A program made the translations under genes and the position numbers. Source: Marsupella aquatica (taxonomy: Eukaryota > Plantae > Marchantiophyta). Taken from it: DNA of 64,000 bases. Shown here piece after piece: positions 2,069 to 44,033 of this stretch. Under the pieces are notes generated by a model, which saw only the letters and a list, made by a program, of their open reading frames with translations, was not told the origin of the DNA and did not search any database. The stretch is from positions 1-64,000 of the forward strand of contig OZ316899.1 in the NCBI GenBank assembly GCA_973895155.1, given 5' to 3'. Every line of letters starts with the position of its first letter. Position 1 is the first letter of the stretch.

Positions 2069-2076
2069 CTCCCAAC

Positions 2077-2107
<31 letters not shown>

Positions 2108-2200: not shown

Positions 2201-2231
<31 letters not shown>

Positions 2232-16182: not shown

Positions 16183-17559
16183 ATGCTCCATAAACGAAGG
16201 GAGAGGAGAAAAAATGAAAATAAATTTCATGAATATGGCGCCGAATTTTCTATCATAACATTTTGTTCAATATGGGATTATCTAAGCAAATTATGTGAAT
16301 CTAAACAACAATTTATTTTATATTGGATTTTAAAAAATGAAAATATTTTTGTATATTTTGTTACACACATTTTACAAATAAATGTGTCCAATTTTTCAAG
16401 AGCTAAATTTTTGAATGGGTATAACAACTGCAGAAGTGCAATTTCACCAATTCTCCCTCTTCAAACACTTCAACAAACCGAGAAAATCTTTCATCATCAT
16501 CAACAGAGACAAAAATTGCCTCCACTATTGAAAAAATTCATGGGAAAATTTCACATCCTTAACCTATCCCAACTCCGTACCTTACAAGTAGAGAGGGTAG
16601 CTTCTTGTAAAGTTGACAATACATTCTCTTCAACACAAGTAGAAGTGCAACAAATATCAAAATCACAACTGAAAAAATTGACTGGAGTGATAATGGGAAA
16701 TTGGAATGAAGACATGACTAAAACCAATCATAGTAATCTTACATTCACATTTGAGCGTTATCCATCAAATTTTCTAGTGATAGAGAAATCTGAAAATATT
16801 GTTTACTTTTACGACAAGTCAGGGAAAAAGCCTTGGCTTGTAGCAATGCTTATGCACCAACAAATATTGGGAGTGACAACATTACAATTCATTCGAAAAC
16901 TTTTGAGTGCATTGTTTGTTGCTCATTCTCCATTTCAAAGAGGCGAGGGGAAAAAAGCTTTTGACAGCTTCATGACAGGATATGGTCCTTGGAATAGCAG
17001 TTACATGGGTGGCCGTTTGACTTATTACACACACCAGAAGAAGATGAATACCATTTTCGATGATTGCCTTGATGTCAAAGATTTTGAGAAGTGGATCGAT
17101 AAATATTCACATATTGAACTTATGGATATTATATTGGGGCTTTATATGTGGTGGTGCCCAGAGATGATAGAGTGTTTTTTGGAATACTCTCATCCGTACT
17201 TACTATCATCTGATGGTGACAAATATCATGGAAGTGAAGAGCAGATAGGGGAGAATGTTAGACCTAGTACTTACCAATTATATATAAGTGAGGATTATTG
17301 TGTGCAAACACATGCTGATGATGATGCAACTGACTTCACCTTAGCGTATGCTAGTCATCCTGACCATTTCCTTTCAGCAATCGATTTTGTAATTCCAGAG
17401 TATGGAATTCGATTGCCAATTAGAGATGGAAATCTATTTGCATTTCGGAGCGATGTTGTTCATGGTACAGGCTTTAGAATGAAAACATCGAATCCTGCAT
17501 ATGTTGGAGCTATTACCGTGAATAAAAACCTCAGCAGACTGATGCAAAAATTACATTAA
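16183..17559 (+). CDS. TET/JBP-like 2OG-Fe(II) dioxygenase, copy 1 (458 aa from ATG 16183)
   Basis: Intact AT-rich ORF; core YQLYISEDYCVQTHADDD...DFVIPEYGIRLPIRDGNLFAFRSDVVHGT gives HxD...H iron ligands in a DSBH pattern; upstream RG...MTGYG motif; basic N-terminus; ATG directly after TTTTGCAG acceptor. Confidence 0.75.
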   Translation: MLHKRRERRKNENKFHEYGAEFSIITFCSIWDYLSKLCESKQQFILYWILKNENIFVYFVTHILQINVSNFSRAKFLNGYNNCRSAISPILPLQTLQQTEKIFHHHQQRQKLPPLLKKFMGKFHILNLSQLRTLQVERVASCKVDNTFSSTQVEVQQISKSQLKKLTGVIMGNWNEDMTKTNHSNLTFTFERYPSNFLVIEKSENIVYFYDKSGKKPWLVAMLMHQQILGVTTLQFIRKLLSALFVAHSPFQRGEGKKAFDSFMTGYGPWNSSYMGGRLTYYTHQKKMNTIFDDCLDVKDFEKWIDKYSHIELMDIILGLYMWWCPEMIECFLEYSHPYLLSSDGDKYHGSEEQIGENVRPSTYQLYISEDYCVQTHADDDATDFTLAYASHPDHFLSAIDFVIPEYGIRLPIRDGNLFAFRSDVVHGTGFRMKTSNPAYVGAITVNKNLSRLMQKLH

Positions 17560-18454
17560 AATTATTGTGTAGATGTGCTCTCCCGGGGCAAGCTGAGAGC
17601 GCTTGGAGGGGCTACTCAAAGTGGTGAGTGCTCGTAGGGTGGAGATGACACCATGGTCATTTTGGATTTAGCCTGGTCATCATTATATTTGGTATTGAAA
17701 TTCAGATTCTGACGTCATTTTAGCGATTCTTTCAAGAAGAGTAAGGGTTTGGCATAATCTCGTTGAAAAATGGAATGTTGTCATCATGACTTTGCAATAT
17801 TGGGCATGTTGAGGTGTGAAAGGTAAGGCATGTTACTTGTTATGGGGGTGATATATTGAAATGGGGAGGTTTTGCAAGATAGAAGAACTCAAATAAATCA
17901 ACTCAAAGGTGGAATTGACATGATCAGCACACGTACCCTTGAGAGTAACAAACACTTTGATGATGAGGCACCAACCACAAGTTGCAAACCCCAAAGGACA
18001 AGGGTGGGTGTGGATGTCCGGAAAATGGTCTTATTCTTGTGGGGTTAGTGGTATGCATTCATTGTATGACTTTGTAGAAGAAACATACAGGCAACTTCAC
18101 CTTGTTTAGTAAATCACCCTTATTGGGCTTGTTACTTGCTTCCCATGGGCTGAAGATACAACTCTAGAGATTCTATATAGGTGGGCATCCAAACTCATCA
18201 AGGGCATAGTTACACTTGATTTGCGTGAACACCTCCAGTCATCAAATTATTGAATGTTGTCCAAACTAATCTTCTAAGCCATTTTGGTTTGCCATGACAC
18301 AACCCATGCAGACCATTGAAATAAGCACATGTGAAACTGATTTTTTTGAATACCCTGTCTGATTCTTGTAGGCCCGCTTGTAGGTCCATTACAAGGAGAG
18401 TGAATTGCAGAATTGGCCATTGTTTCTAACGGGTCTGGAAGGCTTGACAAGGTT

Positions 18455-19110
18455 AGTACATCTTAACACTTGCATTTTATGATTGACATGAGGGCATTCC
18501 AGCACTCATGTTGCAAGGCAGGGGGCTGTTTCACCTGGATTCAATTATGATAAGAATTACATATAAAAGTAGTTCTAAACTAAGGAAGAATTAAATTCAC
18601 ATCCTTTATTGCCTCCTATTATTTTCACCTTCCCATGTACTTGTTTTGTCTTAGGGTATCACAATATTTCTGGGGGCGGTGGTGGTTGGAAAAGGTTGGC
18701 ACATTTTGACACTTGCATTTAACAATTGAGATAAGGGCATTCCGGCACTCATGTTGCAAGGCAGGGGGCTGTTTGACCCGGAGTCAATCATACAAAAATT
18801 ATATATAAAAGTAGAAAGAAAAAAAACCAAATTCACATCCTACATTTCCTCCTACTGTTTTCCCTCTCCTGCTTGTTTCTATTATGGTATCATATTATTT
18901 CTAAAGAAGGAGGGGGGCAGCTCAAAAAAGTTAATATATCTTGACACTTACATTTTAATGATTGAGATGAGGGCATTCCGGCACTCATGTTGCAAGGCAG
19001 GGGGCTGTTTGACCCGGACTCAATCATACAAGAATTACATATAAAAGTAGAAAAGAAAAACCAAATTCACATTCTACATTTCCTCCTACTATTTTCACTT
19101 TCTTACTTGT
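18455..19110. repeat. Three copies of a ~240-bp unit downstream of TET-like copy 1
   Basis: Core GGGCATTCC(A/G)GCACTCATGTTGCAAGGCAGGGGGCTGTTT repeats, with unit starts at ~18467, ~18710 and ~18945. Confidence 0.9.
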
Positions 19111-21746
19111 TTCTATTATAGTTGTAGTTTGCCAGAGAGAACCAAAAGCACACTTTTATGTCTCTAAACTTTTATGAACCCTAAAGTTCCACTGACCATT
19201 TGTCTTATGAATCTATACAACACAGCGGTGTTATATGAATTCACATGGTCCGAGAATTCCCAAGATTACAGGGATTTATGAAAATATACATTTTGACTAG
19301 GATGACAAAGATTTAGAGTAAAGAATTCTTTATTTTCACACAAAGTGCATTTTGGAATGACATGGGAGTTTAAAAGTTTACATGGATATCCTCTACGAAT
19401 GCATGATTCTTTCAACATCCCATCCGAGCTTATGACTCTTTTTGGTCTTTCGCCGTGGTTTAAAAAGCAAAAGCCAACGCCCGCTGAATGACTCCCTTTT
19501 TGCTAAAAGACGTTAAAACAAAAGCTCAATTTAGTCAATTGACACATTAGCTGTCCGCTATAAAGTTGGATTGCACGACATCACGAGTGACGTGTTTACC
19601 ATGTTTTGGGAGCTATTCCTTCACAGTAGCTGTAACCTTCTCCCAAGCCTGGTGGGTTGTGTTGTTGAGAGATCGCTACTACTACAGTACTCGTTCTGTT
19701 GACGGACGATCAGCTGGGCAGGAAAGCAAGGAGCGATACAAATCAGACTTTGAGATTTGTAACTCGATTCTGACCTCTGTGTCAATTAGTAACATTTGGC
19801 AGTACTATCTGCGGGTTTCCTTCTCAAGCTATCACCAATGGAGAAATTGAGTCGTTGGTCAGTCTGTTTTACTGGACCATTGCACCTTCATTCGCCGGTG
19901 CCCCATGATCAGAAACCAGCGTCAATTGTATCAGAATTTGTGAAATCAAGATCTAAAGTGCCTTGGTCCTCTTAAAGCGACAGGTTGCCAACCAGCTTTC
20001 ATAGCAGATCGGAAGGAAAAATTGAACTAAGTCTGCCTCACTGAAGGTGCATGTTTACGGATTTTACACGTCTTGCCTCTACCACTTCTGTTGACATTTT
20101 GTCCTAGCTCAGTGACTGAGGTAGACTTGTGATGATATCCGAAACTCTATGTTAAGTGTATGCGGAAAAGAGATAGTCCTATGAATATCTTAAGAACGTC
20201 CTTGAACTAAAGGACATGAGGGGCATTTTGACTAAAGCTTTGTACAGATCATTTAGAGTAGGTCCATATCAATAGACATAAGTTTACGGCTGGAGTTAGT
20301 AGCCATTCGGATTAATACAACACGGCACCTTAGGCATACTCCAAATCCCACCTTGTAATTTTACTGGAGACCCCAGTTTTGATCAGGTTGACGGCACTTT
20401 GTCTAGCTACTCAATTGATTCAGAGCCCTACACCAGCTTGCCAATTTGTGATGGCATAAATGAAGGAATTTTGCGTCCTCATCGGCCGCTGCAGTCTAGC
20501 TCGTCTACCAGCAAGACAAGCGCGAACCATACTTACACCAATAGGTTCAGATCCATGATTTAGGAAAATAACCTTTTTTGGGAAGCGTTCGCGGCACCAG
20601 ATGGGACCCGGCCCCATGCCTATCGATCTCATGAGTGCCTCTGTAATTATTTGCCTTGTTTTGAGCTGTCACTTACATAATCGTACTGTCTGGAGACTTT
20701 AGGGTTTTGTTTGATTTGCCTTGTTTTGAGCTGAGGCAAGAATCGTACCCACATCTTAATTTCAATGAAGAGCAGATTGAGACTCTGCAATAATACTGCA
20801 AGAAGTCGCCCACGTACGAAAGGTTGTTCTGAAATTGGCTAGTGACCGAGTTCCAGTAATAATGATTCAACTTAGATTACAAACGTTATAGACGAGGAGA
20901 GAAGTAGTTTTCACCGCATTCTGCAGACCACGACCGACCTAATCTGAAACGTCGAGGCTCTTATTCACAATGAGGAGTAATCCCCAAAATCAGGCAGCTT
21001 GAAATCTGAAACCTTGGATAATAAGTGGGCTGCTATGGCAGTATAGTGTTGACAACACCTCAGAAACACAGACCTCTAAATCTTGTGGAGATGAAAGCAC
21101 CGACTGATTTCTCACATGGTAAGGGACTCCATTAATCTTAATAAACGATCATGATATGGCCAGGAACTAAACAGTAGCAGAAGATAGTTTATTACGTTGA
21201 TCTTTATGCACCACCAAGCCAGTAGCATCTTCTAAACCAAGTCAACTGGATAGAAAGTCGGAATTAGGTCCAGAACATTATTTTGTAGCTAAACAAAAAC
21301 AATTACGACACAGGAGCACATATCCACCATCATTTCTTATGTTTTCCTAAATTGCCATCTACAGAAAATATCGTAGATGTCCCTAGCCCTCATATGCAGA
21401 AGGCATTCACGAAATCACATTCCATTTCCAATGACAAGAGCACAGCTTATAGGGAAGAGTACAACTGCAGCAGCTCGAAACAACCTAGACAGACATTGAA
21501 GGAGAAGTATTTCGCCCCGTACAGAGTGCGCATTTACACATTGGAGATTCGAGAAGAATTTTGATCTCGAAATACTTCACACTATTGTGTCATGTTGGTC
21601 ATGCCAATTTGCACCTTGCTGCAAATGCATGGCTGGCTGCTGGCGCGGCCAAATAGAAAGGGGGAGTGTTGGGTAGACATTAGTCGTATGCGGGTGCTCA
21701 TCTTGCTTTAAGATAGAGGCGATGGGGCAAGGGTAGGCGCTGAGGT

Positions 21747-24679: not shown

Positions 24680-24995
24680 CAAGGCCTAGAATAGAACAAG
24701 CCAAAACAAACTTGAGAGGGGACAACCCTTAATCAGCGCTAACCTCTGTTAGGGTATATGCTCAAGCCTAGAATAGAACCAGCCAAAACAAACTTGAGAG
24801 GGACAAAAACAGCAACCTCTGTTACGTATATGCTCAAGCCTAGAATAGAACCAGCCAAAACAAACTTGAGAGGGACAAAAACAGCAACCTCTGTTACGTA
24901 TATGCTCAAGCCTAGAATAGAACCAGCCAAAACAAACTTGAGAGGGGACAAAAACAGCAACCCTTAATCAGCGCTAGCCTTTGTTAGGTATATGC
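24680..24995. repeat. 72-bp minisatellite, ~3.5 copies
   Basis: GTATATGCTCAAGCCTAGAATAGAACCAGCCAAAACAAACTTGAGAGGG at 24754, 24826 and 24898, plus partial flanking units. Confidence 0.95.
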
Positions 24996-25329
24996 TCCCA
25001 GCAGGGACATTACCTTGTTATTTTGGGGGGCGGTTTGTCTTTCTGGCTACTTTAATTAGCGGTGTTGTGCTGGGGATAACCGGGGACATAGATTGGTTAG
25101 GACAAGGCACTTGATACTAGCATAATCTTAATTAAACTAACAAAACTCCACGAGGCAAGCATGACCTTCTTTCTCAGATCAGGTTTAGGTAGCACGAAGT
25201 CACTACAATTTCTGCATGTGTAGCACAAGATTAATCATATATATACTACTAGTTAGCGGGGATCAATTGTACAGGCTTCATTAGTATCTCACTTGGAATC
25301 AGACTTGAGTGGCATAATAGCGGTACAAT

Positions 25330-25600
25330 ACTATGTGCTTCGGTAGCTTAATATGATCGATAGAGTTTGTACCATCAGCGAGAGGTGCTCGCCTACTAAG
25401 TGCTTCTGTAGCTTATGATCGATAGAGTTTGTACCATCAGCAAGAGGTGCTCGCGGAGGTGCTCGCCTACTATGTGCTTCTGTAGCTTATGATCGATAGA
25501 GTTTGTACCATCAGCAAGAGGTGCTCGCGGAGGTGCTCGCCTACTATGTGCTTCTGTAGCTTATGATCGATAGAGTTTGTACCATCAGCAAGAGGTGCTC
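25330..25600. repeat. 62-75-bp minisatellite, ~4 copies
   Basis: TATGATCGATAGAGTTTGTACCATCAGC(A/G)AGAGGTGCTCG repeated in tandem. Confidence 0.95.
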
Positions 25601-27696: not shown

Positions 27697-29519
27697 CCCG
27701 GATCCCTCTCCAGCTTCAATTCCAGCTTTTGCAGCAACTTCTACATGTGCTGAAAAAAGTACTTCCGACTTTCCGCGGCATAGTCCATTGAATACTGGTT
27801 ATGTTTGTATAGTTGCTGAGACGAATGCGCTGCTTGCTGTAAAGCAGAATCGCCTACGTAGCCGAGAGGAAGCATTTATGCTGCCACTACTCCAGCAAAT
27901 GCCAGGAGAGCGCCTCCGTCAGGTGAGGCGGCTCAGACAGCACTAGATTTGCAAACTAAGACTGTGAGTTGCTCACCCAGCTCCAAACGAGGGTGACGTT
28001 AGCGGACAATCACATCCGCTCCCAACAAGCCTTCAATATATTGCACACTTTGATGGGTATTGCACCTGTGTCATTGATTACCCAACTCCACCGATGTGCT
28101 ACCCAATTTCTTCACCTTCCCCAACAATTCTCCCGAAAATAGACACCCAAATGCCATCGTCCTCAACTTTTCAGTTGCTCATAATTATAATTCATTTCCA
28201 CACGAAAGAGATGCTCTGATAGAACACGAATCATAGGACAATCGGCACTTCCACCCTCCCCCCCCCCCCTCTCAGTCTAGTCTTGTCCTTCCACGTTGGA
28301 GCTGGTTGATAATTTCCAGAGTCTCCCTTCCACGCGGTCATTTCCAGAGCAGGTCCACGAGTAACCCAGAGCAATTGAGATTCTCAGTGCCATTCATAAT
28401 GAGCGTGGAAAAGCAGTCATCGGAGGTCCGACCATTTCTGCCGAGAGCCAACAGCGATCATCCAAGACTGAAGACAACCAGTGGCGACAAAATTTGGGCG
28501 CCGATTGTCCGATTGCAAAGTCACTTCAGGGACTTTGCAATCTGTTCCAACGCAAAGGACCCAGGTGAGCTCAGCTCAACTCAGTGGGGCCGCAGCATAA
28601 GTAGAAGGTCCTTCATTGATCTTCTAGCTCCCAACACTTCAGGCACTTTGCATGAGTCTCGTCGTAGTAGTACGTACCCGTAAATTGTGGCGCTTGATTC
28701 AATTGTTGAGTTATATGGCATTCTGGAGCTTTACTTCTCCTTCTCAACAAGAGGGGTTGCACACCAACTTTGCCACAACACTTGCTACCACCCATCAACA
28801 AGCTAGTTTATTTTGAGCACAACCTTTACATGGTATGCTTCTTAGTTGGTATTTTTGAAATTTCTTTTAATTGGAAGTTCACACCCATTGATTCAGTCCT
28901 TAGATTGATTTTTGGTAGGGTGCAGCTCATATAGAAATAGTGATACAATGATTGTTTCTTTCACGTTCCTAACCTCACAGAGTTTACTTTAGTCTCTTTT
29001 GGATACCCTGTTACAATCTACAAAGTAGTTATTTGCTTTTAGGTAAACATTTGTCTTGCATGTCATTTGTACTTTGCTAGGTTGGAAGTCTAAATGCTAA
29101 CACTTTGGCAACAATAGGTTCCAGTTTCCTATGTTAAATGTGTACAGTCAGAAGGGAGCCAGAGTATATTCTTAAGGGATTTTGTTCTTCAAGGACTTAC
29201 TGCAAGCAAGTGAAACTTGTTAGTTAAGTACAAGCTCATTTTGGCATTAATTTGATGTTTGTTTGCAATCAGCTCAAGTTGCTACGTGGAGCCCCAAATA
29301 CTAACCTAGAAGTTGGGAAATCATACTTGAATTTCATTTATTTTCTCTAAGGTGAGTTCTTACTATCATTTATTTGTTTAAGTATAATTCATGAAGGACA
29401 TGGAAAAATAAAATAAAGCAAAGAAAATATAAGTATTTTAAAACAAATATTGACTATATTTTTCTACTTATTATCTTATGAATTTGCCTAACATATGTAT
29501 TATAAAACTAAAAAATTGA

Positions 29520-29690
29520 CTTTATTTTGAAATATATATCTGGCATGCTTTTCTGATTATTGTTATTTAATAGTTCCAGATAGTTTGGCCGGAGATATGT
29601 ATTTTGAAATATGTATCTGGCATACTTTTCTGGTTATTGTTATTTAATAGTTCTAGATAGTTTGACTGGAGATATGTATTTTGAAATAAA
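29520..29690. repeat. ~77-bp tandem duplication in the intron upstream of TET-like copy 2
   Basis: TATTTTGAAATAT(A/G)TATCTGGCAT...GGAGATATG twice, plus a partial third. Confidence 0.9.
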
Positions 29691-29729
29691 TATCTGTATA
29701 AATTAAAGTATGTTTTTGGAATTTTTCAG

Positions 29730-31172
29730 ATGGCAAAACGAAAGTTTTGGAAAGTGAACAAACAAATGAAGGAAGATGGCAAATATGAGTATGAGAAAAT
29801 GAAATTTGCAATGGACGTTTTCATTCAAATTTTTTCAGCGATCATGATATTGCATCCACGTTCACAAAAGTTTGCCATGTTATTTCTTCTTCAAGAAGAT
29901 AATATTTTTCAAGCATTTGTACAAAATGTATTGAATATTAAACATACTGTATCGAAAGCAATGATATATAATGCTTACTATAGATTTAAAGAAATTGGAC
30001 CACCAAAAACCTTTACTTCTTGCGCATGGGAGAATATCTGTGATATTCTTGATCATCATTATTCTTTAGATTCAGTACCCTATAGTATAAGAAAATACAT
30101 CCATTTTCTTAGGTCATCTACCTATATTGAAGAGTGTGTAAAAAGAGAAAAAAATATGCTAGAGAAAAAAGAAATGGTGTTTGAAAAAATTATTTCCCAA
30201 TTTTGGTGGGGAAATGTGAATCCAATGGAATTAGTGCAAGGATTTTGGGGAAGAGTTGATGATGAAGGTGAATGTTTTTATCGCTTAGAATTAGAAAAAA
30301 CATTACAAATACTTTCTAGAAGAAAAAACAAAGGGAAAGAAATTGAAATTGAAGAGGCACCTATATATAGGGAGCTTCCAATTTCTTATGTTGAAATCCA
30401 AAAAACAAAACAGGTTACTGAGATCTATGATAAAATCTCAAGTGAGCTAGTGGGTATCCATATTCGCCCTAAAGATGTTCATAAATCTTTTACTATATTG
30501 ATGCGAACTTATCTTAAAGATCTTTTTTGTGCTCATCCAAGTTCAAAAAGATCTAAAACTAGAGCATCCTATATGAGTGAAATGGTGGGGTTCGGTCCAT
30601 TTCACCATACATGGACACCTGGAAAAAATGTTACATCTTTCTACACTCATAGTAATAAGTTAGTAAAAGCTTCAAAACCTTTAAAAGATTTTGGTAGATT
30701 TATTGATCGATTTGCACATGGGGCTGTGGTAGAAATTTTAATGTCTATGTGGTTTAGATATTATCCTACGTTATTACATACTTTTCTTAGATGTTGTAAC
30801 CCTTACTTAGAAACTTCCCAATATATTAAGGAAGGTGTTGAGATACCATTTTTTGATAAGCACATGAAGAAGGGACCTCCTGCTTATCAACTATTCATTA
30901 CTAAAGATTATTGTTCACGTTTTCATGTGGACAATGATAGGACAGAGTGGACACTAGCATATACTAGTCACCCTGATGAACATATTTCACCAGTTGATTT
31001 TGTATTTGCTAAACATGGATTTATATTACCTTTGCATAATGGTGATTTATTTGCATTCAAAGGCAAACATCTCCATGGTATGGCTTTTAGAAAACCAACA
31101 GAAAATCCTGCCTATATTGCAGCTTTAGTTATGAATAGTGGCTTAGGAAAATTATTAAATAAAATAGAGTAA
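29730..31172 (+). CDS. TET/JBP-like 2OG-Fe(II) dioxygenase, copy 2 (480 aa, most divergent)
   Basis: Intact ORF; YQLFITKDYCSRFHVDND...DFVFAKHGFILPLHNGDLFAFKGKHLHG; SEMVGFGPF; ATG directly after TTTTTCAG. Confidence 0.75.
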   Translation: MAKRKFWKVNKQMKEDGKYEYEKMKFAMDVFIQIFSAIMILHPRSQKFAMLFLLQEDNIFQAFVQNVLNIKHTVSKAMIYNAYYRFKEIGPPKTFTSCAWENICDILDHHYSLDSVPYSIRKYIHFLRSSTYIEECVKREKNMLEKKEMVFEKIISQFWWGNVNPMELVQGFWGRVDDEGECFYRLELEKTLQILSRRKNKGKEIEIEEAPIYRELPISYVEIQKTKQVTEIYDKISSELVGIHIRPKDVHKSFTILMRTYLKDLFCAHPSSKRSKTRASYMSEMVGFGPFHHTWTPGKNVTSFYTHSNKLVKASKPLKDFGRFIDRFAHGAVVEILMSMWFRYYPTLLHTFLRCCNPYLETSQYIKEGVEIPFFDKHMKKGPPAYQLFITKDYCSRFHVDNDRTEWTLAYTSHPDEHISPVDFVFAKHGFILPLHNGDLFAFKGKHLHGMAFRKPTENPAYIAALVMNSGLGKLLNKIE

Positions 31173-35079: not shown

Positions 35080-35567
35080 AAACAATTGCTATGTTGAAAG
35101 GTCGTCTACAGCGAGGCATTGCTATAGACTCGTACACATATGTTAAAAGTTCTGCAAATGTGCTTGCAACAGAAAGACCTTTCAGGAGCCAAGCAAATTC
35201 ATGATTGCATCATCGAGAGTGGAATTCACGAAAATCCATATGTGGCAATCACGGTATATCAAATGCAGAGGTTTATCGGATGCACGTAGAGTTTTTGATC
35301 AAATTCAGAAGAAGAGTGTTATTACTTGGACCAGCATGATTGCGGGATATGCTAGGAGTGATCATGTTCAATCTGCACTCGACATTTTCAATCTAATGCG
35401 CCAAGAAGGCGTGAAGCCAAATGAGATCACGTATCTGAGCATCCTGAATGCATGGTCAAGCCCATTAGCTCTAACATGCGGAAAAGAAATTCATGAGCAT
35501 GTTCGACAGGTCGGCTTTGAATCATCCGTGCGTGTAGGATCTGCTCTCGTACTGATGTACGCTAAAT
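35080..35567 (+). pseudogene. PLS-class PPR N-terminal fragment, frameshifted and truncated at the duplication junction
   Basis: DSYTYV...; DARRVFDQIQKKSVITWTSMIAGYA...GVKPNEITYLSILNA...GKEIHEHV...VRVGSALVLMYAK followed by a stop at the junction. Confidence 0.9.
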
Positions 35568-38500
35568 AGTTTGCATTTTGACCCAAAGCTGCCCTGACGA
35601 GATGTCAAGGTCTGTCTGGTTTGAGAGTCGAATGACGGATTGTGAATGAATGAGTTGACAAAGATCCACAAAAGATTTTTGACCTGAAACGACTTCCCCA
35701 TCATGTGGGCCTTCCGAATCATAATGAAGTCCTTCCAAAATATCAAACACATTAGTCTTCAGGATGTCAAAGTGTTCCCTGAAGAGCTTCTCGGCTTCCT
35801 CTTCAAATTTAGTTGCTGCAAACTTCCGAGCGAGTTTGAGCATCTGCTCCTAATCGTCGGCAAAGCTCAGCCTCGCAAAACTCAGCTTCGATGATTAATT
35901 AGCATCTAGAACAAATTGGAAGGGATATCTAGTGACGGCCGATCGCGATGTAGCAGTGATGACAAAACAACGTTGTAGGTCCTGTTTGGAGGCCAATTCA
36001 ACGACAGTGGTTTGTTTCAGCCCATCAAAAGTGGAATAATGATCAGCGGAGGTCAACTATTTTTGTAAATGTGTAGCAGGTCCTAGTACAGAACCATCGT
36101 TTTGACTGGCACTCTGCCAGTGTGAGAATTGAATGATTGGCACGATGTCAGCTACGTAACACCAGGCCTTAATAGTATCGTCCCCCAAAATCTGGTACAC
36201 TGGAGCATTGTGTCCAAAGTGGTGGTCCATCCCGGCTTCACTTTCCCCTTAGCAATGAGGTAAAATTTGGTGTATAACAGCCCCTGCTTACAATGGAATG
36301 GCTGATGACGATTATCAAAAAGAGGGAGCCTCGGTACGTCACCTAAACATACCACGAATTCGTCCCATTTCGCATGATGGCATCTGATGGATCACCTCTG
36401 CCAATGCCTTTAAAATTCTCTCAGTTTGATTCCAGCATGGGCTCTGTCCCAATTCAAATGCTTGGCATGACCCAATTTACTAACGTTGCAGCTCACCAAT
36501 TGCTGGAAAAGGAAGGGGGCAGCGCTTCTGCATGTTTGTAGGATTTAATGGTTATGCGGACGGCAACCACGACTGAAGAATAATCACGGAATAGCTAGCT
36601 TCCTCCCTAGCTAGCTAGATATGGTGGCAGGAAAGCAATTCATTCATGATCCAGGCGCAACAGTGCACGAGAGAACGAGACTGACATCCCTAGCGAGCGG
36701 TGACTTCCTCCAATGCAGCAGCATGTACTGTAGGCAGAGCTCGACTCACTAGTTAACACTGCAATCAGTATGGGAATTGATGTGTGATCTTCCATAGCCA
36801 AGTAAGCAATGAGACCACACTGCTGTTGATGCTGCTGTGCTTGCTGTCTGAGGCGACGGCGGCTGATGATGCCGTTGCATGCTGCCTGATGAGGTCATAT
36901 ATTCAGAGATAGTATGTTTGCATGGCAGCTAGCTGCTGCTGCTGTATGTTCGGAGCACTATTCTGTAGTCAGACGACTGCTGCGCCTCTTGCGCTCTAGG
37001 GATTAACAGTGCTGTTGCTGCTCAGGTCTACTATGGGATGGAATCATTCTGTCTCACTCAGACCAACTACATCTGAGATTAAAATGGAAGGAAGAAGGAA
37101 TGAAGGTGCGCGGTGCATGCATGAGCCCCCAGGAAAAGAGAGAGAGACGAGAGAAGGAGAAACGGAATAGAGAGAGGAAGAGATCTACGGACAATACCGG
37201 GGGTTGGGAGATTGTCGTGTGTTTGCAACCTCCCCAAGTCTCAAACTAGCAGACTGACTCACATCTGCTATTCTCAGGACTGGTCTGGTCTGATGGTCTG
37301 GTCTGGTCTGGTCTGGTGGTCTGGTGTGGTCTGGTGTGGTCTGCTCGGGTCTGGTCTGATCGATGGGATCTCCCGCTCTCTTACACGCTCCCTTTTTCCC
37401 TCTGCTAGTCTATTCTAGAATACAGGTGAGGATTGGGAATGGAACACAGGTGTGTGAGTCATGCGGAAGTGAAGAGGATTCTCCGGTTTACTCCTATTAA
37501 ATGAGATGGGACTGGGCTATGGTGGGTTCTAGTGGCCTTCTTCAGTTGCGTCAACAGGCGACGGCAGGTAGAGTAGAGTTTCATGATCCCGATGAAACTT
37601 TCGCTTTGTCACTTGCCTGGTGGTGGACGGAGGGAGGGCTTTCATTATAAGATGGGACTTGTATCATGCGTATCATGCGCTGCTCTCCGCCCTCCCATCT
37701 CAGCTGCTGCCGAGTGCTTGTGAAGCATCACTGTACTGTTTTTAATATATTTCAGGCCCTAGCTTCATCATGAGTACTCTCTCCTGTGGACGGTGCTCCG
37801 AGTGGCTGCAGCATCTTCGTCCCCATTGTCCCCCATATTCGCGTAATTCTAGGGCTGTATTGTGATAACAGCAGCTTCGTTCTGGTGCTCTGCCAAGCAC
37901 AGCTCCTTGTTCCCAGAGCTACTGTCCAGAGTGCTAACTTACGTCGTGGCAGTCCTAGTGTGAATCAAGCTTGATCAGGCCCCAAGAAAGCTGACAGAGC
38001 GGCTACATACTACGGCTTGATTCCAAGCTGTGCAAATCTTGCACTTATCTGAGCATGCTTTGTCCCAGATGGGAAGTCTGACCTCTGGGTCCCGCCCCCT
38101 AGCATCTGCTCATCCCAGCTGTTTATCGAACTGTCCCCATTGCCCATTTGATCCGTAGGCTGTGTAGAGCTGTAGCCCCTTTTCCTCCTTGCCCCCGCAC
38201 TTCCGAATTGCAGCTTGAATGAATGTGCACTTTGTAGCCGACTGAGCAGTCAGGTGGATGAAATCAGCTTTAGTACGTATTATGTTAGTCTTTGTCTCCC
38301 TTTGGCCCAGCGTCCAAAGCTGCTGACATGGCTGTTCTAATCACATTGGCTTGCTACAACATTACTCCGACAAGTCTCAGTGACCCAACAGCATCGCGCG
38401 CGGTCCCTAACTACTCCGCCGAATTTTCCAAAGCTCAGCACAGTATTGACTTTACACGTGACCTCTTAAGCAAACCATTCATTCCTGTAGACTCAAATCC

Positions 38501-40430
38501 TGCTCCCTTTGGCCCAGTGTCCAAAGCTGCTGACATGGCTATTCTAATCACATTGGCTTGCTACAACATTACTTCGACAAGTCTCAGTGACCCAACAGCA
38601 TCGCGCGTGGTCCCTAACTACTCCGCCGAATTTTCCAAAGCTCAGCACAGTATTGACTTTACACGTGACCTCTTAAGCAAACCATTCATTCCTGTAGACT
38701 GAAGCAACCGATGCTCAGAGTCTCATCGCCTTCGCAGATCATTGGGGGGCAAGAGACCACGGGCAGCACTTGAGAGATAGAATGCATGTCGACGCAGGAG
38801 CTCAATCACCACTGAACAGCCCCGCCTGGCATCACCATTCTCTGGCTCGTGGGGTCCCGCCTTCATTTCTTCAGCGTTTTGCTTCTCGTTGGACTATCGC
38901 AGCTTCAGTTTTTCAATTGGGCTTGTTACCAGTCTTGTCGTCTTGAGCTTCATCGAGGAGTCTCTAACATGTGTACTTGTCACTCGTCTGGTTAGATCGA
39001 CTTTGTATCGACTGCTGCTGCCAACAGATCCTTGTGGTGAGTTCTCACTTCTCTATTTCGAATGTATCTTCCCTCCATATATAGTTAGATCTGACTGGTA
39101 ATTAGCTATTGTATCTCTCAATTATTTTGCACTTTATTAACGTACTCAAGGTGCAAACATGGGATCATTAATTTGGCACTGCGAATGTGTTGGAATATAT
39201 TGGGCAACAGACCACCGGCAGCACTTGAGAGATAGAATGCATGTCGTCGCAGGAGCTCAATCACCACTGAACAGCCCCACCTGGCATCACCATTCTCTGG
39301 CTCGTGGGGTCCCGCCTTCATTTCTTCATCGTTTTGCTTCTCGTTGGACTATTGCAGCTTCAATTTTTCAATTGGGCTTGTTACCAGTCTTGTCGTCTTG
39401 AGCTAGCTTCATCGAGGAGTCTCTAACATGTGTACTTGTCACTCGTCTGGTTAGATTGACTTTGTATCGACTGCTGCTGCCAACAGATCCTTGTGGTGAG
39501 TTCACCTTGAGATCATCAATGAGCACGAGAATACGATATTGATGAAAGCGAAGCACTCCTTCACGTTGGATGCATTCCTCCAGTACCTTCTCGACCAGGC
39601 TGTCAACATTGCTTACTTAAACAAGGTGAGACGAAACTAGATGCGTCAATTTTTCCATTTCTCATGTCTCGAGTAAGGCACGAATTAGAGTGGAGCCAAT
39701 CCAGTACTTCACGGTGAATTCTAGCACACTATTGTGGCTGCGGTAGTCGGCAGATCGGTGCAGATTGACTTGTGTGTTCTGACAAGTCAATCCCCCTCTG
39801 GTCTCTCGTCTCGCTTCTCCTCCTCGTCTCTCTTCTCCTCTTCGTCCTCTTTGTCGTCTTCATCGACCTTCGTGTCGTCGACTTCTTCCTTTTCCAGAGT
39901 TCCGCAATTCTCTCGAGTCAGAGCGTCTCCGCGAGTGCTTTTTTACTGCGGAGTGAATTACCTTACCTTGACGCCCCCATGGGGCGCGTTGACTGCTGGC
40001 CCAAGATTAGTAGGCTGGACCGCTGGAAGTAGTGGTGCTCTGATTATTAGCGTCCGTCAAGTTCAGCACGGCAACTTGGCCCTGGAGTCCCGGACACATT
40101 AGGGGCGCTGCCCTTTGCACAAGGGCCTGATTTGTCCTTAGTTGAACTACAGTTAATTAAGGAGAATTACACCAACATGTTTTTAACTAAATGGCCACTA
40201 GCCATATCAGTGTATTTTATAAGGTTTTTACTTTTTCGCCAGTGACGAATGTACGATGCTAGAAATTAATATTTCTTATTTGATTATTTTACTGACCATC
40301 TATAAAGCTTTTATTCTATAAAGCTGTGAAGAGGGTCGATATATGGCGGATCTTTAGAGGTACGGATGGCTCATAGGCAGTTTTGTGACTTTCGTGGTAG
40401 GAAGCTGCCTTCAATCTGTCCCAAGATAAG
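35566..40430. repeat. Segmental duplication copy B, with insertions (36098-37880, 39785-40300) and internal 207-bp and ~300-bp tandem duplications
   Basis: Collinear with 13047-15463; 38296-38700 is a 207-bp unit twice; 38750-39050 is repeated at 39210-39500. Confidence 0.93.
37280..37358. repeat. Imperfect (GGTCT)n microsatellite
   Basis: Seen directly. Confidence 0.9.
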
Positions 40431-40760
40431 GTTGGGAAATTGGCATAGAGGGTGACCTTGCCATGTATGTTGTATGAGATTGTGGCCATTTCAGCCAATT
40501 CTTTTGATGCTTCAACCGAGTTGTTGTTGCACCTCACTGGTCACGTCAAGTGAACTACTGTCCTACTGCGTTTATGTCCACTAAGGCCCTTGGTGGCTGG
40601 TCGAGTAGAACTCCCACACCAATTGCATCCCCATCCTTCGTGTTGCTCAAAAGTTGGCGAGAGGACTTGGAAAGTTCCCTACCCATCGAGTCAGCACTCT
40701 AACGTCTTCTGGGGAAAGGTTGGGGAAAGATGCTTCCGAGATAAAAATCTCCGAGGCAGT

Positions 40761-40775
40761 CCCTAAACCCTAAAC
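40761..40775 (+). promoter_or_regulatory. Interstitial telo-box (CCCTAAACCCTAAAC) upstream of the PHD ORF
   Basis: Two telomeric heptamers ~550 bp upstream of ATG 41329; regulatory role is inferred from known plant telo-boxes. Confidence 0.4.
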
Positions 40776-41328: not shown

Positions 41329-42009
41329 ATGGCACGTAACAAGCAGAAGGCCAAGAAGCCTAAGACAGAGGTGAGCAACACGCAGGTGTTTGGGACAGAT
41401 TGTGAAAAGTTCTCCAAGAGTCAAGTGTACCAGAAGGCAGCTCATTGTTGTGCCATTTGTGATGATGGTGGGGGCTTGGTTATCTGTGATGGCCCATGCA
41501 TGAGACATTTCCACCTAAACCCTGAGTCTAACCTTGCCGTAGAGAACAACTGTCCAGGGGTGGGCCTCCCCTCTGCACACGAGGGAGCCTGGATGTGCAC
41601 TGATTGTGTAGAGAAGCAAGCTAAGTGTGCACAGTGTGGGAAGTTGGGGTCTTATGAGACCTTTGCTGATGCTGGACCAGTTGTTAGGAAATGCCCTGAC
41701 AAATTTTGCATGAGATTTTATTGTTTGTCATGTTTGCCTACTCATGCCACAGTTTGCCCAGTTCATACATGCAAGGCATGTGGTGAGCATGATGATGAGT
41801 ATTGGACAGACATAGTCCATTGTGTTAGATGTCCCACAATGTGGCATTTTCATTGCTTGAAGGACCTTCAAGCAGAAGGCTATGCTTGTGATAGAGAAAT
41901 CTATGATCACTCTGCACATGGCGTTGATCGATGGATATTTTATTGTCATCGCCATCCAATTGATCCTACTTTGCGCATTCCTATCAGAGATCACATATCT
42001 TGGCTTTGA
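41329..42009 (+). CDS. Stand-alone EDM2-type triple PHD-finger protein (226 aa)
   Basis: CAICDDGGGLVICDGPCMRHFH...C...WMCTDC...CAQCGKLGS...CPVHTCKAC...CVRCPTMWHFHCL...IFYCHRHPIDPTLRIPIRDHI follows the EDM2 PHD cluster as I recall it (CAICDNGG...CEGSCLRSFH...CPLHKC...CRRCPKSYH...IYCQEHEIDEELLTPVRDHV); acceptor TTGTAG sits 2 nt before the ATG. Confidence 0.85.
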   Translation: MARNKQKAKKPKTEVSNTQVFGTDCEKFSKSQVYQKAAHCCAICDDGGGLVICDGPCMRHFHLNPESNLAVENNCPGVGLPSAHEGAWMCTDCVEKQAKCAQCGKLGSYETFADAGPVVRKCPDKFCMRFYCLSCLPTHATVCPVHTCKACGEHDDEYWTDIVHCVRCPTMWHFHCLKDLQAEGYACDREIYDHSAHGVDRWIFYCHRHPIDPTLRIPIRDHISWL

Positions 42010-42668
42010 AGCTGAACAAAGTGGGTTGGCATAGTGCCCCTAATGTGGATGTATTGTTTGGAGATTGCAGAGAGTTCATTTTTGATGAGAAGGGCCATTG
42101 AGATATTAGGCAACAGTTATCTTGTGCTTACATGTGGCTAGGTACATGCCACTAAAAACTTATCTTAAGCCTTCCATGATCTCTTCAGACTGAGCAATCA
42201 TTTTGAAAATTAATAAAATTATAAACTTATTATTATGTGTCTATGAAGTATTTAAGGCTTTTTTAACGGATGACAAATTCTTAATTTGTATAAGTTCTTG
42301 ATTCTGATTCAATGGGTAGTCCTTCATTTATAACATACTTTATATGTGTTATCACAAAACAATACTCAAGACACTATCTCCTTTTTGTATTCTGTGCAGT
42401 ATCATTCATGTCAACATTTGTACAATATTGAAGCCAGACCCAAGAAAAGAAGTGACAACTACTTTGGACAAATCAGTACCTTTGGGAAGGTGAGTACCTA
42501 AACATCAAATTTATTCCTTTCTGTCCTCCTAAATCTTAAATGGTTTGTAAATCCAATGACAAAAGTTACAACTTACGGCATTTCGGTACTCAGATCTTAA
42601 ATGGTTCGTGTACTATTTGACCGGAATTGTAATTTTTACTAAATAAATTATTTGTTCTTACATGGCAG

Positions 42669-44033
42669 ATGGGAAAAAGAAAGCGTAATACTTTGAGAAA
42701 AAAAGAATTGGGGGAAGATTTTTCTGTGGATGTATTTGCTACAGTGTGGGAAGACCTTAAAAAATTAGATACCATAAAATTGAAGTTTGCACTTCATTGG
42801 ATTCTATGTCACGACAACATTCTTGAACTTTTTGTTAAAAAAGTTCTTAAACTAGAGTCTTCAAGATTTTCAAGAACACTATTCTTGAATGGGTATCAAA
42901 ATTGTAGAAGCCATATCATTCAGATCTTTCCTCCTGAGGTGTTCATTGAAATTGATGACATCTTTCTTCATCATGGTTTCAGACTAAAATTACCTCAACC
43001 TTTGAAAAAATCAATTTCCATGTTTTCTAATCTTAACATTAGAAAGCTTAAACTTTTTCAAAAAGAAAGAGATAATCTTTGTAGAAGTGGAGGAACTTAT
43101 GCCAAAGTTGAAGTAGACGTTCAACGTATTTCCTCTTCAAAACTAAAAACACTTACTGGTGTAATTTTAGGTGATTGGGATCAAACTACAACAACATTTA
43201 CCTCTGATCCAAACTTTAGTTTCTTAAAATTTCCATCAGACCTTATTATCATAGAAGAAAAGAAAGGGTTTACTTATCTTTTTGATAGGTCTGGAGTCAA
43301 CCCATATCTGATAGCAATGATATTCCATCAAGATATCCTATCACCTGATTCAATGGTCTTCATTCGAAGATTATTAGAACAATTACATGCTGCCCATCAT
43401 GTTATCCAAAGAGGGAAAGGAAAAAGATCATGGGAAAGTAAGATGACGGGGTTTGGTCCTTTTCATAATCCTTACAAAAAAGATCAAAGTTGTGTATCTT
43501 TTTATACCCATGAACAAAAGATAAAGACATTCTTCAATCAAGATTGTCCTGATGCAGCCAATTTTGAAGACATGGTAGATAAATATTCTCATCGAGAGTT
43601 AATCGATATTATTCTTGGACTGTACATGTGGTTATGTCCACAAATGTTAGACAGTTTTTTAGATTATTCTCATCCTTACTTACATTCAAATGATTATAAG
43701 ATGAACATATTTGATAAAGCACTAAAATGTAAAGGTCCTAGTGCTTATCAATTATATATTAGTAAAGATTATTGTGTAGAAACTCACGCTGATCATGATA
43801 CAGCAGAATTTACTTTATGTTATGTTAGTCATCCTAATGCCAAAATTTCTCCTGGAAATTTTGTTATTCCAGAGTATGGAATATTATTACCTATTAGAGA
43901 TGGTAATTTATTTTTATTTCGTAGTGACGTTGTCCATGGCACAGGATATAGAATTCCAACATCAAATCCTATATACGTAGGAGCTGTTACCATAAACAAA
44001 AAATTAGATAGACTTTTACGAAAAAAACATTAA
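42669..44033 (+). CDS. TET/JBP-like 2OG-Fe(II) dioxygenase, copy 3 (454 aa), preceded by a 90-nt exon (42400-42489) and intron (42490-42668)
   Basis: YQLYISKDYCVETHADHD...NFVIPEYGILLPIRDGNLFLFRSDVVHGT; donor AAG|GTGAGT and acceptor GGCAG|ATG. Confidence 0.78.
   Translation: MGKRKRNTLRKKELGEDFSVDVFATVWEDLKKLDTIKLKFALHWILCHDNILELFVKKVLKLESSRFSRTLFLNGYQNCRSHIIQIFPPEVFIEIDDIFLHHGFRLKLPQPLKKSISMFSNLNIRKLKLFQKERDNLCRSGGTYAKVEVDVQRISSSKLKTLTGVILGDWDQTTTTFTSDPNFSFLKFPSDLIIIEEKKGFTYLFDRSGVNPYLIAMIFHQDILSPDSMVFIRRLLEQLHAAHHVIQRGKGKRSWESKMTGFGPFHNPYKKDQSCVSFYTHEQKIKTFFNQDCPDAANFEDMVDKYSHRELIDIILGLYMWLCPQMLDSFLDYSHPYLHSNDYKMNIFDKALKCKGPSAYQLYISKDYCVETHADHDTAEFTLCYVSHPNAKISPGNFVIPEYGILLPIRDGNLFLFRSDVVHGTGYRIPTSNPIYVGAVTINKKLDRLLRKKH

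What the first reader, a model, noticed from the sequence alone, without database searches (positions are those of the whole stretch)
16183..44033. Family of intact TET/JBP-like dioxygenases in a land-plant subtelomere
Seen: three intact 454-480 aa paralogues (16183, 29730, 42669) share an N-terminal helical region, an R(G/S)...M(T/V)G(Y/F)GP motif, Y-x6-DYC-x3-H-x-D-x-D, FV(I/F)xxxG..LP...G(N/D)LF.F and a distal HG. By manual count the 87-aa core is 63/87 identical between copies 1 and 3 and 43/87 between copies 1 and 2, while neighbouring host fragments are broken, implying selection. Known: HxD...H is the 2OG-Fe(II) triad; TET/JBP enzymes oxidise 5mC or T; they are expanded with KDZ transposons in basidiomycetes and present in Chlamydomonas; angiosperms demethylate via DME/ROS1 glycosylases. 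Inference: a plant TET-like DNA base-modifying family, probably element-borne.
Basis: partly seen in the sequence, partly recalled or inferred. Interest (0 to 1): 0.9.

Follow-up and report, generated by a model that had tools for sequence, protein, structure and literature searches.

The report
TET-like DNA dioxygenase genes in plant subtelomere
Next to a plant telomere lie three intact, anciently diverged genes (and one decayed copy) for enzymes whose predicted fold is that of the TET/JBP DNA-base oxidases, a kind of enzyme that land plants are generally thought to lack, from a family absent from annotated protein databases.

Summary
A fourth, frameshifted fragment lies at 63284-63763.

- The best reviewed match is S. 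pombe Cif1, then JBP2, CMD1 and JBP1.
- The HxD...H iron triad is kept across the family.

The family is divergent. Pfam does not recognise it. The usual co-substrate arginine on the last core strand is missing, and another arginine sits five residues after the distal histidine.

Each copy has a plant-type intron ending exactly at its ATG.

Relatives occur only in unannotated raw-run and metagenome assemblies. Two related coded organisms hold many variant copies.

I found no transposase or terminal repeats, so "element-borne" stays open. Activity on DNA is inferred, not shown.

Other first-stage notes report more such ORFs elsewhere in this genome; I could not check them.

The parts
1..2290 (.). 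Telomere array (CCCTAAA)n grading into degenerate CCCTCAA-type repeats; sets the subtelomeric context
   Evidence: Read directly; GC skew -1.0
16183..17559 (+). TET-like gene copy 1 (c1), coding exon, 458 aa, intact
   Evidence: HxD...H triad present
15942..16182 (+). c1 predicted 5' intron (GTAAGT ... TTTTGCAG), ending exactly at the ATG; GC 0.17
   Evidence: sequence signals only; no RNA evidence
29730..31172 (+). TET-like gene copy 2 (c2), coding exon, 480 aa, intact; the most divergent paralogue
29352..29729 (+). c2 predicted 5' intron (AAG|GTGAGT ... TTTTTCAG|ATG); GC 0.23
42669..44033 (+). TET-like gene copy 3 (c3), coding exon, 454 aa, intact; the copy that was modelled. Iron ligands H373, D375 and H423 are at nt 43785-43793 and 43935-43937
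42400..42668 (+). c3 upstream exon (42400-42489, bounded by an acceptor and a donor) and predicted intron (42490-42668, AAG|GTGAGT ... GGCAG|ATG)
   Evidence: the exon and intron are conserved at about 80% in the c4 fragment
63284..63763 (+). Fourth copy (c4): upstream exon, intron and N-terminal coding part of a c3-type gene, broken by frameshifts and lacking the start region; similarity is lost after 63763
   Evidence: tblastn pieces in three frames; 78-87% nucleotide identity to 42397-42900
13047..15471 (+). Upstream block, 94-96% identical to 35566-40440; ends 0.7 kb before c1. Context only; relation to the genes is unexplained
   Evidence: holds a gyrase-B fragment
35566..40440 (+). Second copy of the upstream block (with internal duplications); ends 2.2 kb before c3
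41329..42009 (+). PHD-finger ORF (226 aa) between the block and c3. Its part 41430-42018 is a very high-copy repeat in related genomes. It is absent next to c1 and c2, so it is not a constant partner
   Evidence: Pfam NSD-type PHD hits below threshold; depth 10-100 times the flanks and loose ends at 41430 and 42018; no other copy in the window

Best explanation
These are genes of a divergent, plant-resident branch of the TET/JBP superfamily of Fe(II)-dependent nucleic-acid-base dioxygenases. Their nearest relatives are the fungal 'Tet-like' proteins (CcTet, Cif1) and algal CMD1.

Shown here:
- Three intact paralogues and one decayed copy.
- A confident TET-type fold over residues 133-454.
- A conserved HxD...H iron triad.
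- A conserved N-terminal arginine (R248).
- An acidic residue two positions after the HxD aspartate (D377).
- A family-specific helical N-terminal domain headed by a basic KRKR-type stretch.
- Plant-type 5' introns.
- Many variant copies in related genomes.

Inferred:
- The proteins enter the nucleus, flip a 5-methylpyrimidine (most likely 5-methylcytosine) out of duplex DNA and oxidise or otherwise modify its methyl group at the iron centre.
- This weakens methylation-based silencing at or around the repeats that carry them. TET/JBP genes carried by KDZ transposons in fungi, and by DNA-1_cRei and Helitrons in Chlamydomonas, are thought to act in this way.

The co-substrate site is not canonical. 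The arginine on the last core strand that holds the 2-oxoglutarate C5 carboxylate in TET2 and NgTet1 is absent, and an arginine at distal-His+5 is conserved instead. Whether 2-oxoglutarate is still the co-substrate is open.
For: Fold:
- AlphaFold2 model: pLDDT 89.2, pTM 0.91.
- Foldseek PDB: ranks 1-22 are all CcTet, TET2 or CMD1.
- VIA-align: TET2 18.1, CMD1 16.2, CcTet 15.0, NgTet1 14.2, against AlkBH3 11.7. The independent wide search gives the same order.
- Swiss-Prot models: Cif1, JBP2, CMD1, JBP1.
- AlphaFold DB clusters: fungal Tet-like proteins, some covering query residues 1-453.

Sequence:
- The family profile hits CMD1 across both iron motifs (E 9.8e-4).
- The only Pfam families recurring among 69 family members are PF20515 (9 members) and PF12851 (3 members).

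Catalytic residues across the family: H373 44/46, D375 43/47, D377 43/47, H423 37/37, R248 32/35.

Selection:
- The ORFs are intact despite 26-49% identity.
- dN/dS is 0.28 for c1-c3, with dS saturated.
- c2 branches outside a clade that holds sequences from other datasets.

Plant gene structure...CAG|ATG acceptors and GTRAGT donors in all three copies.

Multi-copy: 6-34 variant contigs per position in four runs of two coded organisms.

Precedent for TE-borne TET/JBP genes in the green lineage: bioRxiv 10.1101/2022.06.16.496473. Residue roles in TET2, NgTet1 and CMD1: PMC7854593.
Against: - No biochemical evidence, and no RNA evidence that the genes are expressed or spliced. The runs available were contigs of unknown kind and showed no splice joints.
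- Pfam gives no hit for c1-c3, even at E of 1.
- The canonical strand-VIII arginine is missing.
- The base-contacting D/N is at His+4 rather than His+5, as aligned to CMD1.
- The aromatic residue that stacks on the base in TET2 and CMD1 has no clear counterpart.
- No transposase, terminal inverted repeats or shared flanks lie around the copies. Deep divergence with a conserved intron looks more like an old gene family than an active transposon.
- Variants among near-identical copies gave 6 synonymous to 8 non-synonymous changes, which shows no clear constraint (only 14 sites).
Confidence: 0.6

Rival explanations
1. An ordinary, non-mobile host gene family. It is an old TET/JBP-type paralogue group that happens to be amplified by subtelomeric segmental duplication. 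It serves the plant itself, for instance by resetting methylation or regulating subtelomeric or telomere-adjacent chromatin, rather than serving a mobile element.
For: - Deep divergence among the copies, with dS saturated.
- A conserved intron position at the ATG in all paralogues, and an acceptor 14-15 nt before the ATG in homologues from other datasets.
- No transposase, terminal repeats or target-site duplications.
- The flanks are unrelated apart from one recently duplicated block.
- In organism B, similarity to c3 is bounded almost exactly by the ORF (42636-44038), as expected if only the coding part is constrained.
Against: - Many variant copies in related genomes.
- GC3 of 0.21-0.30 and CpG o/e of 0.36-0.48 are unlike every other ORF in the window, which suggests repeat-like methylation history.
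- A decayed copy lies beside what another first-stage note calls a recombinase-helicase ORF (s1-327367, unchecked).
- TET/JBP genes in fungi and Chlamydomonas are mostly transposon cargo.
- The family is absent from annotated plant proteomes.
Confidence: 0.25
2. A TET-fold oxygenase that no longer works on DNA. It acts instead on RNA, a protein or a small molecule, or it is a non-catalytic structural or prion-like factor as proposed for S. pombe Cif1.
For: - The best reviewed structural match is Cif1. From my memory of Iyer et al. 2014, Cif1 is described as an inactive TET/JBP.
- The canonical co-substrate arginine is lost.
- The base-stacking aromatic is not conserved.
- The N-terminal domain has no known DNA-binding fold.
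Against: - The iron triad is almost invariant across the family, so the proteins are not inactive like Cif1.
- All four solved relatives, which outrank everything else, are DNA-base enzymes.
- R248 is conserved; it aligns with the arginine that contacts both co-substrate and flipped base in TET2 and CMD1 (PMC7854593).
- The basic N-terminus looks like a nuclear-localisation signal.
Confidence: 0.1
3. Not functional plant genes at all: either chance ORFs or pseudogenes in decaying repeats, or fungal or other contaminant DNA in the assembly.
For: AT-rich composition unlike the flanks; the closest annotated relatives are in fungi and Amoebozoa.
Against: - Three open frames of 454-480 codons at 32-35% GC, with catalytic residues kept.
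- The genes are contiguous with a plant-type telomere, LRR receptor-kinase, PPR and gyrase-B fragments on one stretch.
- The introns are AT-rich with plant-type signals.
- The same sequences are seen in four runs of two coded organisms.
Confidence: 0.02

Closest known systems
Fungal 'Tet-like 2OG-Fe(II) oxygenase' clade (Pfam PF20515; CcTet of Coprinopsis cinerea, PDB 7VPN/7W5P/8JKK; S. pombe Cif1)
   Same: - Best Foldseek matches in the PDB (CcTet, E 1.8e-8) and in Swiss-Prot (Cif1).
- AlphaFold DB clusters of this clade align over nearly the whole protein, including the N-terminal helices.
- PF20515 is the only Pfam family that recurs, below threshold, among family members.
- The family is multi-copy and repeat-associated, as in basidiomycetes.
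   Different: - None of c1-c3 reaches any Pfam score.
- There is no KDZ or Plavaka transposase nearby.
- The host is a land plant.
- The strand-VIII arginine, present in the distant relatives nearest this clade, is lost in the core plant family.
CMD1, the 5-methylcytosine-modifying enzyme of Chlamydomonas reinhardtii (PDB 7CY4-7CY8)
   Same: - The only solved structure reached by the family's sequence profile (E 9.8e-4, aligned across HxDxD and the distal His).
- It is from the green lineage and is transposon-borne (10.1101/2022.06.16.496473).
- Its strand-VIII arginine does not serve the co-substrate (PMC7854593).
   Different: - About 13% identity.
- CMD1 keeps the arginine (R410) but turns it away and blocks the site with W358, whereas here the arginine is absent and V386 aligns with W358.
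- CMD1's use of vitamin C is an experimental fact. Nothing is known about the co-substrate here.
Human TET2 catalytic domain (PDB 4NM6, 5D9Y, 7NE3)
   Different: There is no Cys-rich domain, no low-complexity insert and no CXXC partner. R1896 has no equivalent. N1387 (His+5) corresponds at best to D377 (His+4).
Naegleria Tet-like dioxygenase NgTet1 (PDB 4LT5, 5CG8) and kinetoplastid JBP1/JBP2
   Different: NgTet1 is a minimal core with both canonical arginines. The JBPs carry a J-DNA-binding domain or a SNF2 helicase. The plant proteins have their own helical N-terminal domain with no PDB match.
AlkB/FTO family of nucleic-acid demethylases
   Same: Double-stranded beta-helix core and iron triad; next-best structural group.

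Membership tests
TET/JBP superfamily (2OGFeDO, nucleic-acid-base dioxygenases) | Double-stranded beta-helix core with the TET-type N-terminal extension, closer in structure to solved TET-family enzymes than to other 2OG oxygenases | tested here: met
TET/JBP superfamily | HxD...H iron-binding triad | tested here: met
   H373, D375 and H423 (c3 numbering) are present in c1-c3 and in 44/46, 43/47 and 37/37 family sequences that cover those columns.
TET/JBP superfamily | Arginine on the last core strand (TET2 R1896, NgTet1 R289) binding the 2-oxoglutarate C5 carboxylate | tested here: not met
   Positions 433-438 hold no Arg or Lys in c1-c3. Distant relatives have R-[YF] at 435-436, the core family has [A/I/V]-Y there and a conserved R428 at His+5. 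This rests on sequence alignment and aligned ranges, not on residue-level superposition.
TET/JBP superfamily | N-terminal arginine contacting the co-substrate C1 carboxylate and the flipped base (TET2 R1261, CMD1 R244) | tested here: inconclusive
   R248 is conserved in 32/35 sequences, including the distant relatives, and lies at the expected place before the M-x-G-[FY]-G motif. Its equivalence was not checked in three dimensions.
TET/JBP superfamily | Asp/Asn shortly after HxD that reads the exocyclic amine of cytosine (TET2 N1387, NgTet1 D234, CMD1 D350; His+5) | tested here: inconclusive
   A conserved Asp (D377, 43/47) sits at His+4. The profile alignment pairs it with CMD1 D349, not D350.
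TET/JBP superfamily | Recognition by the curated Pfam models Tet_JBP (PF12851) or 2OG-FeII_Oxy_6 (PF20515) at the gathering score | tested here: not met
   There are no hits for c1-c3 at E up to 1. Only sub-threshold hits occur, in 9 and 3 of 69 family members. This is a divergent branch outside the current models.
TET/JBP superfamily | Oxidation of 5-methylpyrimidines in nucleic acid | not testable with these tools
   Needs recombinant protein and LC-MS.
Transposon-borne TET/JBP genes (KDZ/Plavaka in fungi; DNA-1_cRei and Helitrons in Chlamydomonas) | Gene lies inside an element with a transposase or RepHel gene, or defined termini and target-site duplications | tested here: not met
   - No inverted repeats of 25 nt or more anywhere in the window beyond chance.
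- Pfam on 22 of the 28 ORFs of 120 aa or more found only a retrotransposon integrase downstream of c3.
- The flanks of the copies are unrelated.
- Helitron-type ends, or an element larger than the window, are not excluded.
Transposon-borne TET/JBP genes | Many near-identical copies in a genome | tested here: inconclusive
   There are 6-34 variant contigs per position at 90-99% identity in four runs of two coded organisms. Run type and single-copy depth are unknown. In the window the copies are old (26-49% identity).

The most novel reading that the evidence does not exclude
The family is a land-plant, repeat-carried DNA modifier whose rebuilt co-substrate pocket (strand-VIII arginine lost, new arginine at His+5) means it does not run the ordinary 2-oxoglutarate reaction. 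Like its nearest solved sequence relative CMD1, it would use another co-substrate such as ascorbate, which is abundant in plants. It would then write a base modification not yet known in land plants, acting as an anti-silencing device for subtelomeric repeats or a mobile element.
Probability: 0.12. Interest if true: 0.9.

Novelty: new variant of a known kind. Interest (0 to 1): 0.68.

Why it matters
Active DNA demethylation in land plants is attributed to DME/ROS1 glycosylases. Whether plants have any TET equivalent, and whether reported traces of 5hmC are enzymatic, has been argued over for years; the review PMC6949463 calls it unresolved.

This window gives concrete, clonable candidates. They are intact genes with a confidently TET-type fold and a complete iron site, contiguous with plant sequence in one stretch. 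The family is invisible to Pfam and absent from annotated proteomes, which would explain why domain-based surveys of plant genomes miss it.

It also extends to land plants the recurring link between TET/JBP genes and repeats or mobile DNA seen in basidiomycetes and Chlamydomonas. The altered co-substrate site is a natural experiment on how this enzyme class chooses its co-substrate.

One caveat on novelty. From my memory of the abstract of Iyer et al. 2014 (PNAS 111:1676; the paper is not held in the library), lateral transfer of fungal TET/JBP genes to some Viridiplantae was already noted. The presence of such genes somewhere in green plants is therefore not wholly new.

Tried and rejected
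- Pfam on c1-c3 gave nothing.
- The PDB sequence search with the three-sequence profile gave only noise. The 69-sequence profile reached CMD1.
- The word-based homologue search found a single relative for c3 and none for the Planoprotostelium bridge protein. I therefore could not assemble a canonical TET/Tet-like alignment for a profile-profile comparison or a rooted superfamily tree.
- Thirty cluster look-ups gave names only for two distant relatives, from Planoprotostelium and Geranomyces.
- Short contigs carrying homologues had no informative neighbours.
- Searches for terminal inverted repeats around each copy and across the window found nothing beyond chance. Flank-to-flank comparison found only the 13047-15471 / 35566-40440 block.
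- The N-terminal domain, modelled alone (pLDDT 78), has no PDB match (best E 0.9). The feature search on it gave only weak pointers to fungal Tet-like clusters (score 0.63).
- RNA evidence was not obtained. All four runs found were contigs of unknown kind. Coverage was flat across intergenic DNA and no joint matched the predicted introns, so they are probably DNA.
- dN/dS is saturated for most pairs. The 14 listed variants among near copies are uninformative.
- I considered a PHD-TET fusion by splicing and rejected it. The PHD ORF ends in a stop before any usable donor, its core is a separate high-copy repeat piece, and c1 and c2 have no PHD neighbour.
- I considered contamination and rejected it (see the rival explanations).
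- The Iyer et al. 2014 paper and Chavez et al. 2014 are not held.

Full report
**What is there**

The window begins with about 2.2 kb of CCCTAAA telomere repeat that grades into degenerate variants. Three long open reading frames lie on the + strand between 14 and 42 kb from the inner end of the telomere:
- c1 at 16183-17559 (458 aa from the ATG)
- c2 at 29730-31172 (480 aa)
- c3 at 42669-44033 (454 aa)

They are paralogues. c1 and c3 are 49% identical in protein, and c2 is 26-28% identical to either.

A fourth copy lies at 63284-63763. It is 78-87% identical in DNA to the upstream exon, intron and N-terminal coding part of c3. It is read in three different frames and lacks the start region, so it is a decayed copy.

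Other fragments in the window are an LRR receptor kinase (9426-11482, minus strand), a PPR piece and a gyrase-B piece. All named relatives of the kinase are embryophytes or a streptophyte alga, at no more than 42-50% identity. The host is therefore a plant without a close annotated relative. I did not determine the lineage.

**Gene structure**

In all three copies the ATG is directly preceded by a polypyrimidine tract and CAG. A consensus donor (GTAAGT or GTGAGT) lies 179-378 nt upstream, and the stretch between is very AT-rich (GC 0.17-0.32). The predicted introns are 15942-16182, 29352-29729 and 42490-42668.
- For c3, a 90-nt exon (42400-42489) with its own acceptor lies upstream and is conserved in c4.
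- Two homologues from other datasets have an acceptor 14-15 nt before their ATG.

The coding part is thus intron-free, but the genes carry a positionally conserved 5' intron of plant type. This argues against contamination or very recent transfer. No RNA data could be brought to bear, so these introns are predictions from sequence signals.

**What the proteins are**

Pfam does not recognise c1-c3, even at E of 1. A profile of the three finds nothing among PDB sequences.

An exhaustive HMMER search of 1.84 billion cluster representatives found 64 relatives (pending). Almost all are fragments from raw-run (Logan), ENA or JGI metagenome assemblies without names. Of the 30 that I looked up, the only named ones are two distant proteins, from the amoebozoan Planoprotostelium fungivorum and the chytrid Geranomyces variabilis. 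Among the 69 aligned family members, the only recurring Pfam families are PF20515 (Tet-like 2OG-Fe(II) oxygenase; 9 members) and PF12851 (Tet_JBP; 3 members), all below threshold.

With this alignment AlphaFold2 gives a confident model of c3 (pLDDT 89.2, pTM 0.91). Residues 14-141 are helical, and a double-stranded beta-helix follows.
- **Foldseek against the PDB:** CcTet, human TET2 and CMD1 fill ranks 1-22, ahead of FTO and AlkB.
- **Independent wide search:** a search of 48,161 PDB clusters that does not rely on Foldseek returns the same four at the top (18.0, 15.4, 14.0, 14.0), and then AlkBH3 at 11.1.
- **Swiss-Prot models:** the order is S. pombe Cif1, JBP2, CMD1, JBP1, and only then FTO and plant flavonoid oxygenases.
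- **AlphaFold DB clusters:** these give fungal 'Tet-like' and 'JBP1/TET oxygenase' proteins, several aligning over query residues 1-453.
- **ESM Atlas:** searches by features and by shape point the same way.
- **Sequence level:** the 69-sequence profile reaches CMD1 (E 9.8e-4), aligning HxDxD and the distal His.

That did not occur.

**Active site**

Across the family the iron ligands are nearly invariant (c3 numbering): H373 44/46, D375 43/47, H423 37/37. Also conserved are R248 (32/35), M259, G263, Y368, D377 (43/47), Y436 and N443.

The CMD1 structure paper (PMC7854593) gives the residue roles in solved enzymes:
- TET2 R1261, NgTet1 R224 and CMD1 R244 contact the co-substrate and stack on the flipped base.
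- TET2 R1896 and NgTet1 R289, on the last core strand, hold the 2-oxoglutarate C5 carboxylate.
- An Asp or Asn at His+5 reads the N4 of cytosine.

In the plant proteins R248 is in the right place for the first role. D377 is at His+4, and the profile alignment pairs it with CMD1 D349 rather than D350.

The strand-VIII arginine is absent. The distant relatives (P0035, P0046, P0057, P0058, P0059, P0064) have R followed by Y or F at positions 435-436. The core family has A, I or V followed by Y, and instead keeps an arginine at His+5 (R428) that the distant relatives lack. The aligned ranges to TET2, CMD1 and NgTet1 place their arginines at model positions 433-438, where c1-c3 have no basic residue.

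Another first-stage note (s1-327551) says that tyrosine replaces the arginine. By the family alignment the tyrosine is the conserved neighbour, and the arginine position itself holds a small hydrophobic residue. Whether R428 takes over, or the co-substrate differs as in CMD1 (which uses vitamin C), cannot be decided without coordinates or an assay.

The N-terminus starts with a basic KRKR-type stretch in most members, which is likely a nuclear-localisation signal. The helical domain that follows is family-specific. Modelled alone (pLDDT 78), it has no PDB match.

**Selection and age**

At 32-35% GC a 454-codon open frame is vastly improbable by chance. For c1-c3, dN is 0.44 and dS is at least 1.58 (saturated), giving a ratio of about 0.28. 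Other pairs are saturated.

In a maximum-likelihood tree c1 and c3 are sisters (90/86). c2 branches outside a clade that also holds sequences from other runs and metagenomes, and the Planoprotostelium/chytrid group is separate. The paralogues are therefore old and have been kept intact.

The 14 best-supported variants among near-identical copies in other runs split 6 synonymous to 8 non-synonymous, which is uninformative.

**Mobile or not**

For mobility or repeat status:
- In four runs of two coded organisms, the c3 region is covered by many short contigs 90-99% alike, about 6 to 34 variants deep per position. In organism B the similarity is bounded at 42636 and 44038, almost exactly the ORF.
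- All three paralogues have GC3 of 0.21-0.30 and CpG o/e of 0.36-0.48, whereas every other ORF in the window has GC3 of 0.40-0.56. This fits a long history of methylation and deamination.
- In Chlamydomonas, CMD1 lies in the DNA transposon DNA-1_cRei, and most other TET/JBP genes lie in Helitrons (10.1101/2022.06.16.496473). In basidiomycetes they travel with KDZ elements.
- Other first-stage notes report further ORFs of the same lengths elsewhere in this genome, and a recombinase-helicase ORF just beyond c4. I did not check these.

Against mobility:
- There are no inverted repeats of note anywhere in the window.
- The ORFs tested hold no transposase, apart from a retrotransposon integrase downstream of c3.
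- The flanks of the copies are not homologous.

One oddity remains. A block of 2.4-4.9 kb (13047-15471 and 35566-40440) is 94-96% identical and lies upstream of both c1 and c3 in the same orientation, although the genes themselves are anciently diverged.

I leave 'element-borne' at about even odds.

**The PHD ORF**

The PHD ORF (41329-42009) upstream of c3 is not a constant partner.
- c1 and c2 have none.
- It ends in a stop before any usable splice donor.
- Its part 41430-42018 has 10-100 times the depth of its flanks, with loose ends at both borders, so it is a piece of a very high-copy repeat.

**Literature**
- A 2019 review treats the existence of TET equivalents in plants as unresolved (PMC6949463).
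- A 2023 review says that reported plant 'TET-like' enzymes remain unverified (PMC10306282).
- A 2026 genome paper reports Plavaka transposons, known from the fungal TET/JBP study, in streptophyte algae and a moss (PMC13519894).
- From memory, the abstract of Iyer et al. 2014 mentions lateral transfer of fungal TET/JBP genes to some Viridiplantae. I could not read the paper.

**Verdict**

The family is a divergent, unannotated branch with its own N-terminal domain and a rebuilt co-substrate site. Activity on DNA, expression and mobility are inferred or open.

Noticed in passing
window 13047-15471 and 35566-40440: Two copies of a block, 94-96% identical in DNA; the second has internal tandem duplications around 38296-39521. 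Each ends 0.7 or 2.2 kb upstream of a TET-like gene on the same strand, although those genes are only 49% identical in protein. Both copies end at a donor-like AAG|G(C/T)TG. This could be a shared promoter or first exon, or a recombination edge. It is unexplained.
   Followed up: partly
window 41329-42009 (core 41430-42018): A 226-aa ORF with three NSD/EDM2-type PHD fingers (Pfam hits below threshold). In four public runs its core has 10-100 times the depth of the flanks, with loose ends at 41430 and 42018, so it is a piece of a very abundant repeat. One listed variant introduces a stop codon (41383 C>T).
   Followed up: partly
window 16183-17559, 29730-31172, 42669-44033: All three deep paralogues share an unusual composition (GC3 0.21-0.30, CpG o/e 0.36-0.48), against GC3 of 0.40-0.56 in every other ORF of the window. 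Homologues from other datasets have GC of 0.40-0.45, like their flanks.
   Followed up: partly
window 9426-11482 (minus strand): An LRR receptor-like kinase gene in two adjoining ORFs (500 and 201 aa), truncated within the kinase domain. The best named relatives are land plants at no more than 42-50% identity.
   Followed up: partly
window 46732-55046 (minus strand): Retroelement-like region: an integrase-core ORF (49360-50157) flanked by an 825-aa ORF and a 1245-aa coiled-coil ORF, neither with any Pfam match. It is inserted just downstream of c3.
   Followed up: no
window 12793-13233 (minus strand) and 35201-35569 (plus strand): Fragments of a DNA gyrase B-like gene and of a PPR-repeat gene at the left edges of the two block copies.
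   Followed up: no
window 40757-40775: Interstitial telomere-like motif (CCCTAAACCCTAAAC, telobox-like) between the duplicated block and the PHD ORF.
   Followed up: no
window 18446-19122, 24672-24969, 25320-25603, 29523-29676: Short tandem arrays (units of about 235, 72, 74 and 77 nt) in the spacers between the TET-like genes.
   Followed up: no
window 1981-2290: At the inner edge of the telomere the CCCTAAA repeat changes to CCCTCAA-type and CCTCCTCCCAACCTCAA-type variant repeats.
   Followed up: no
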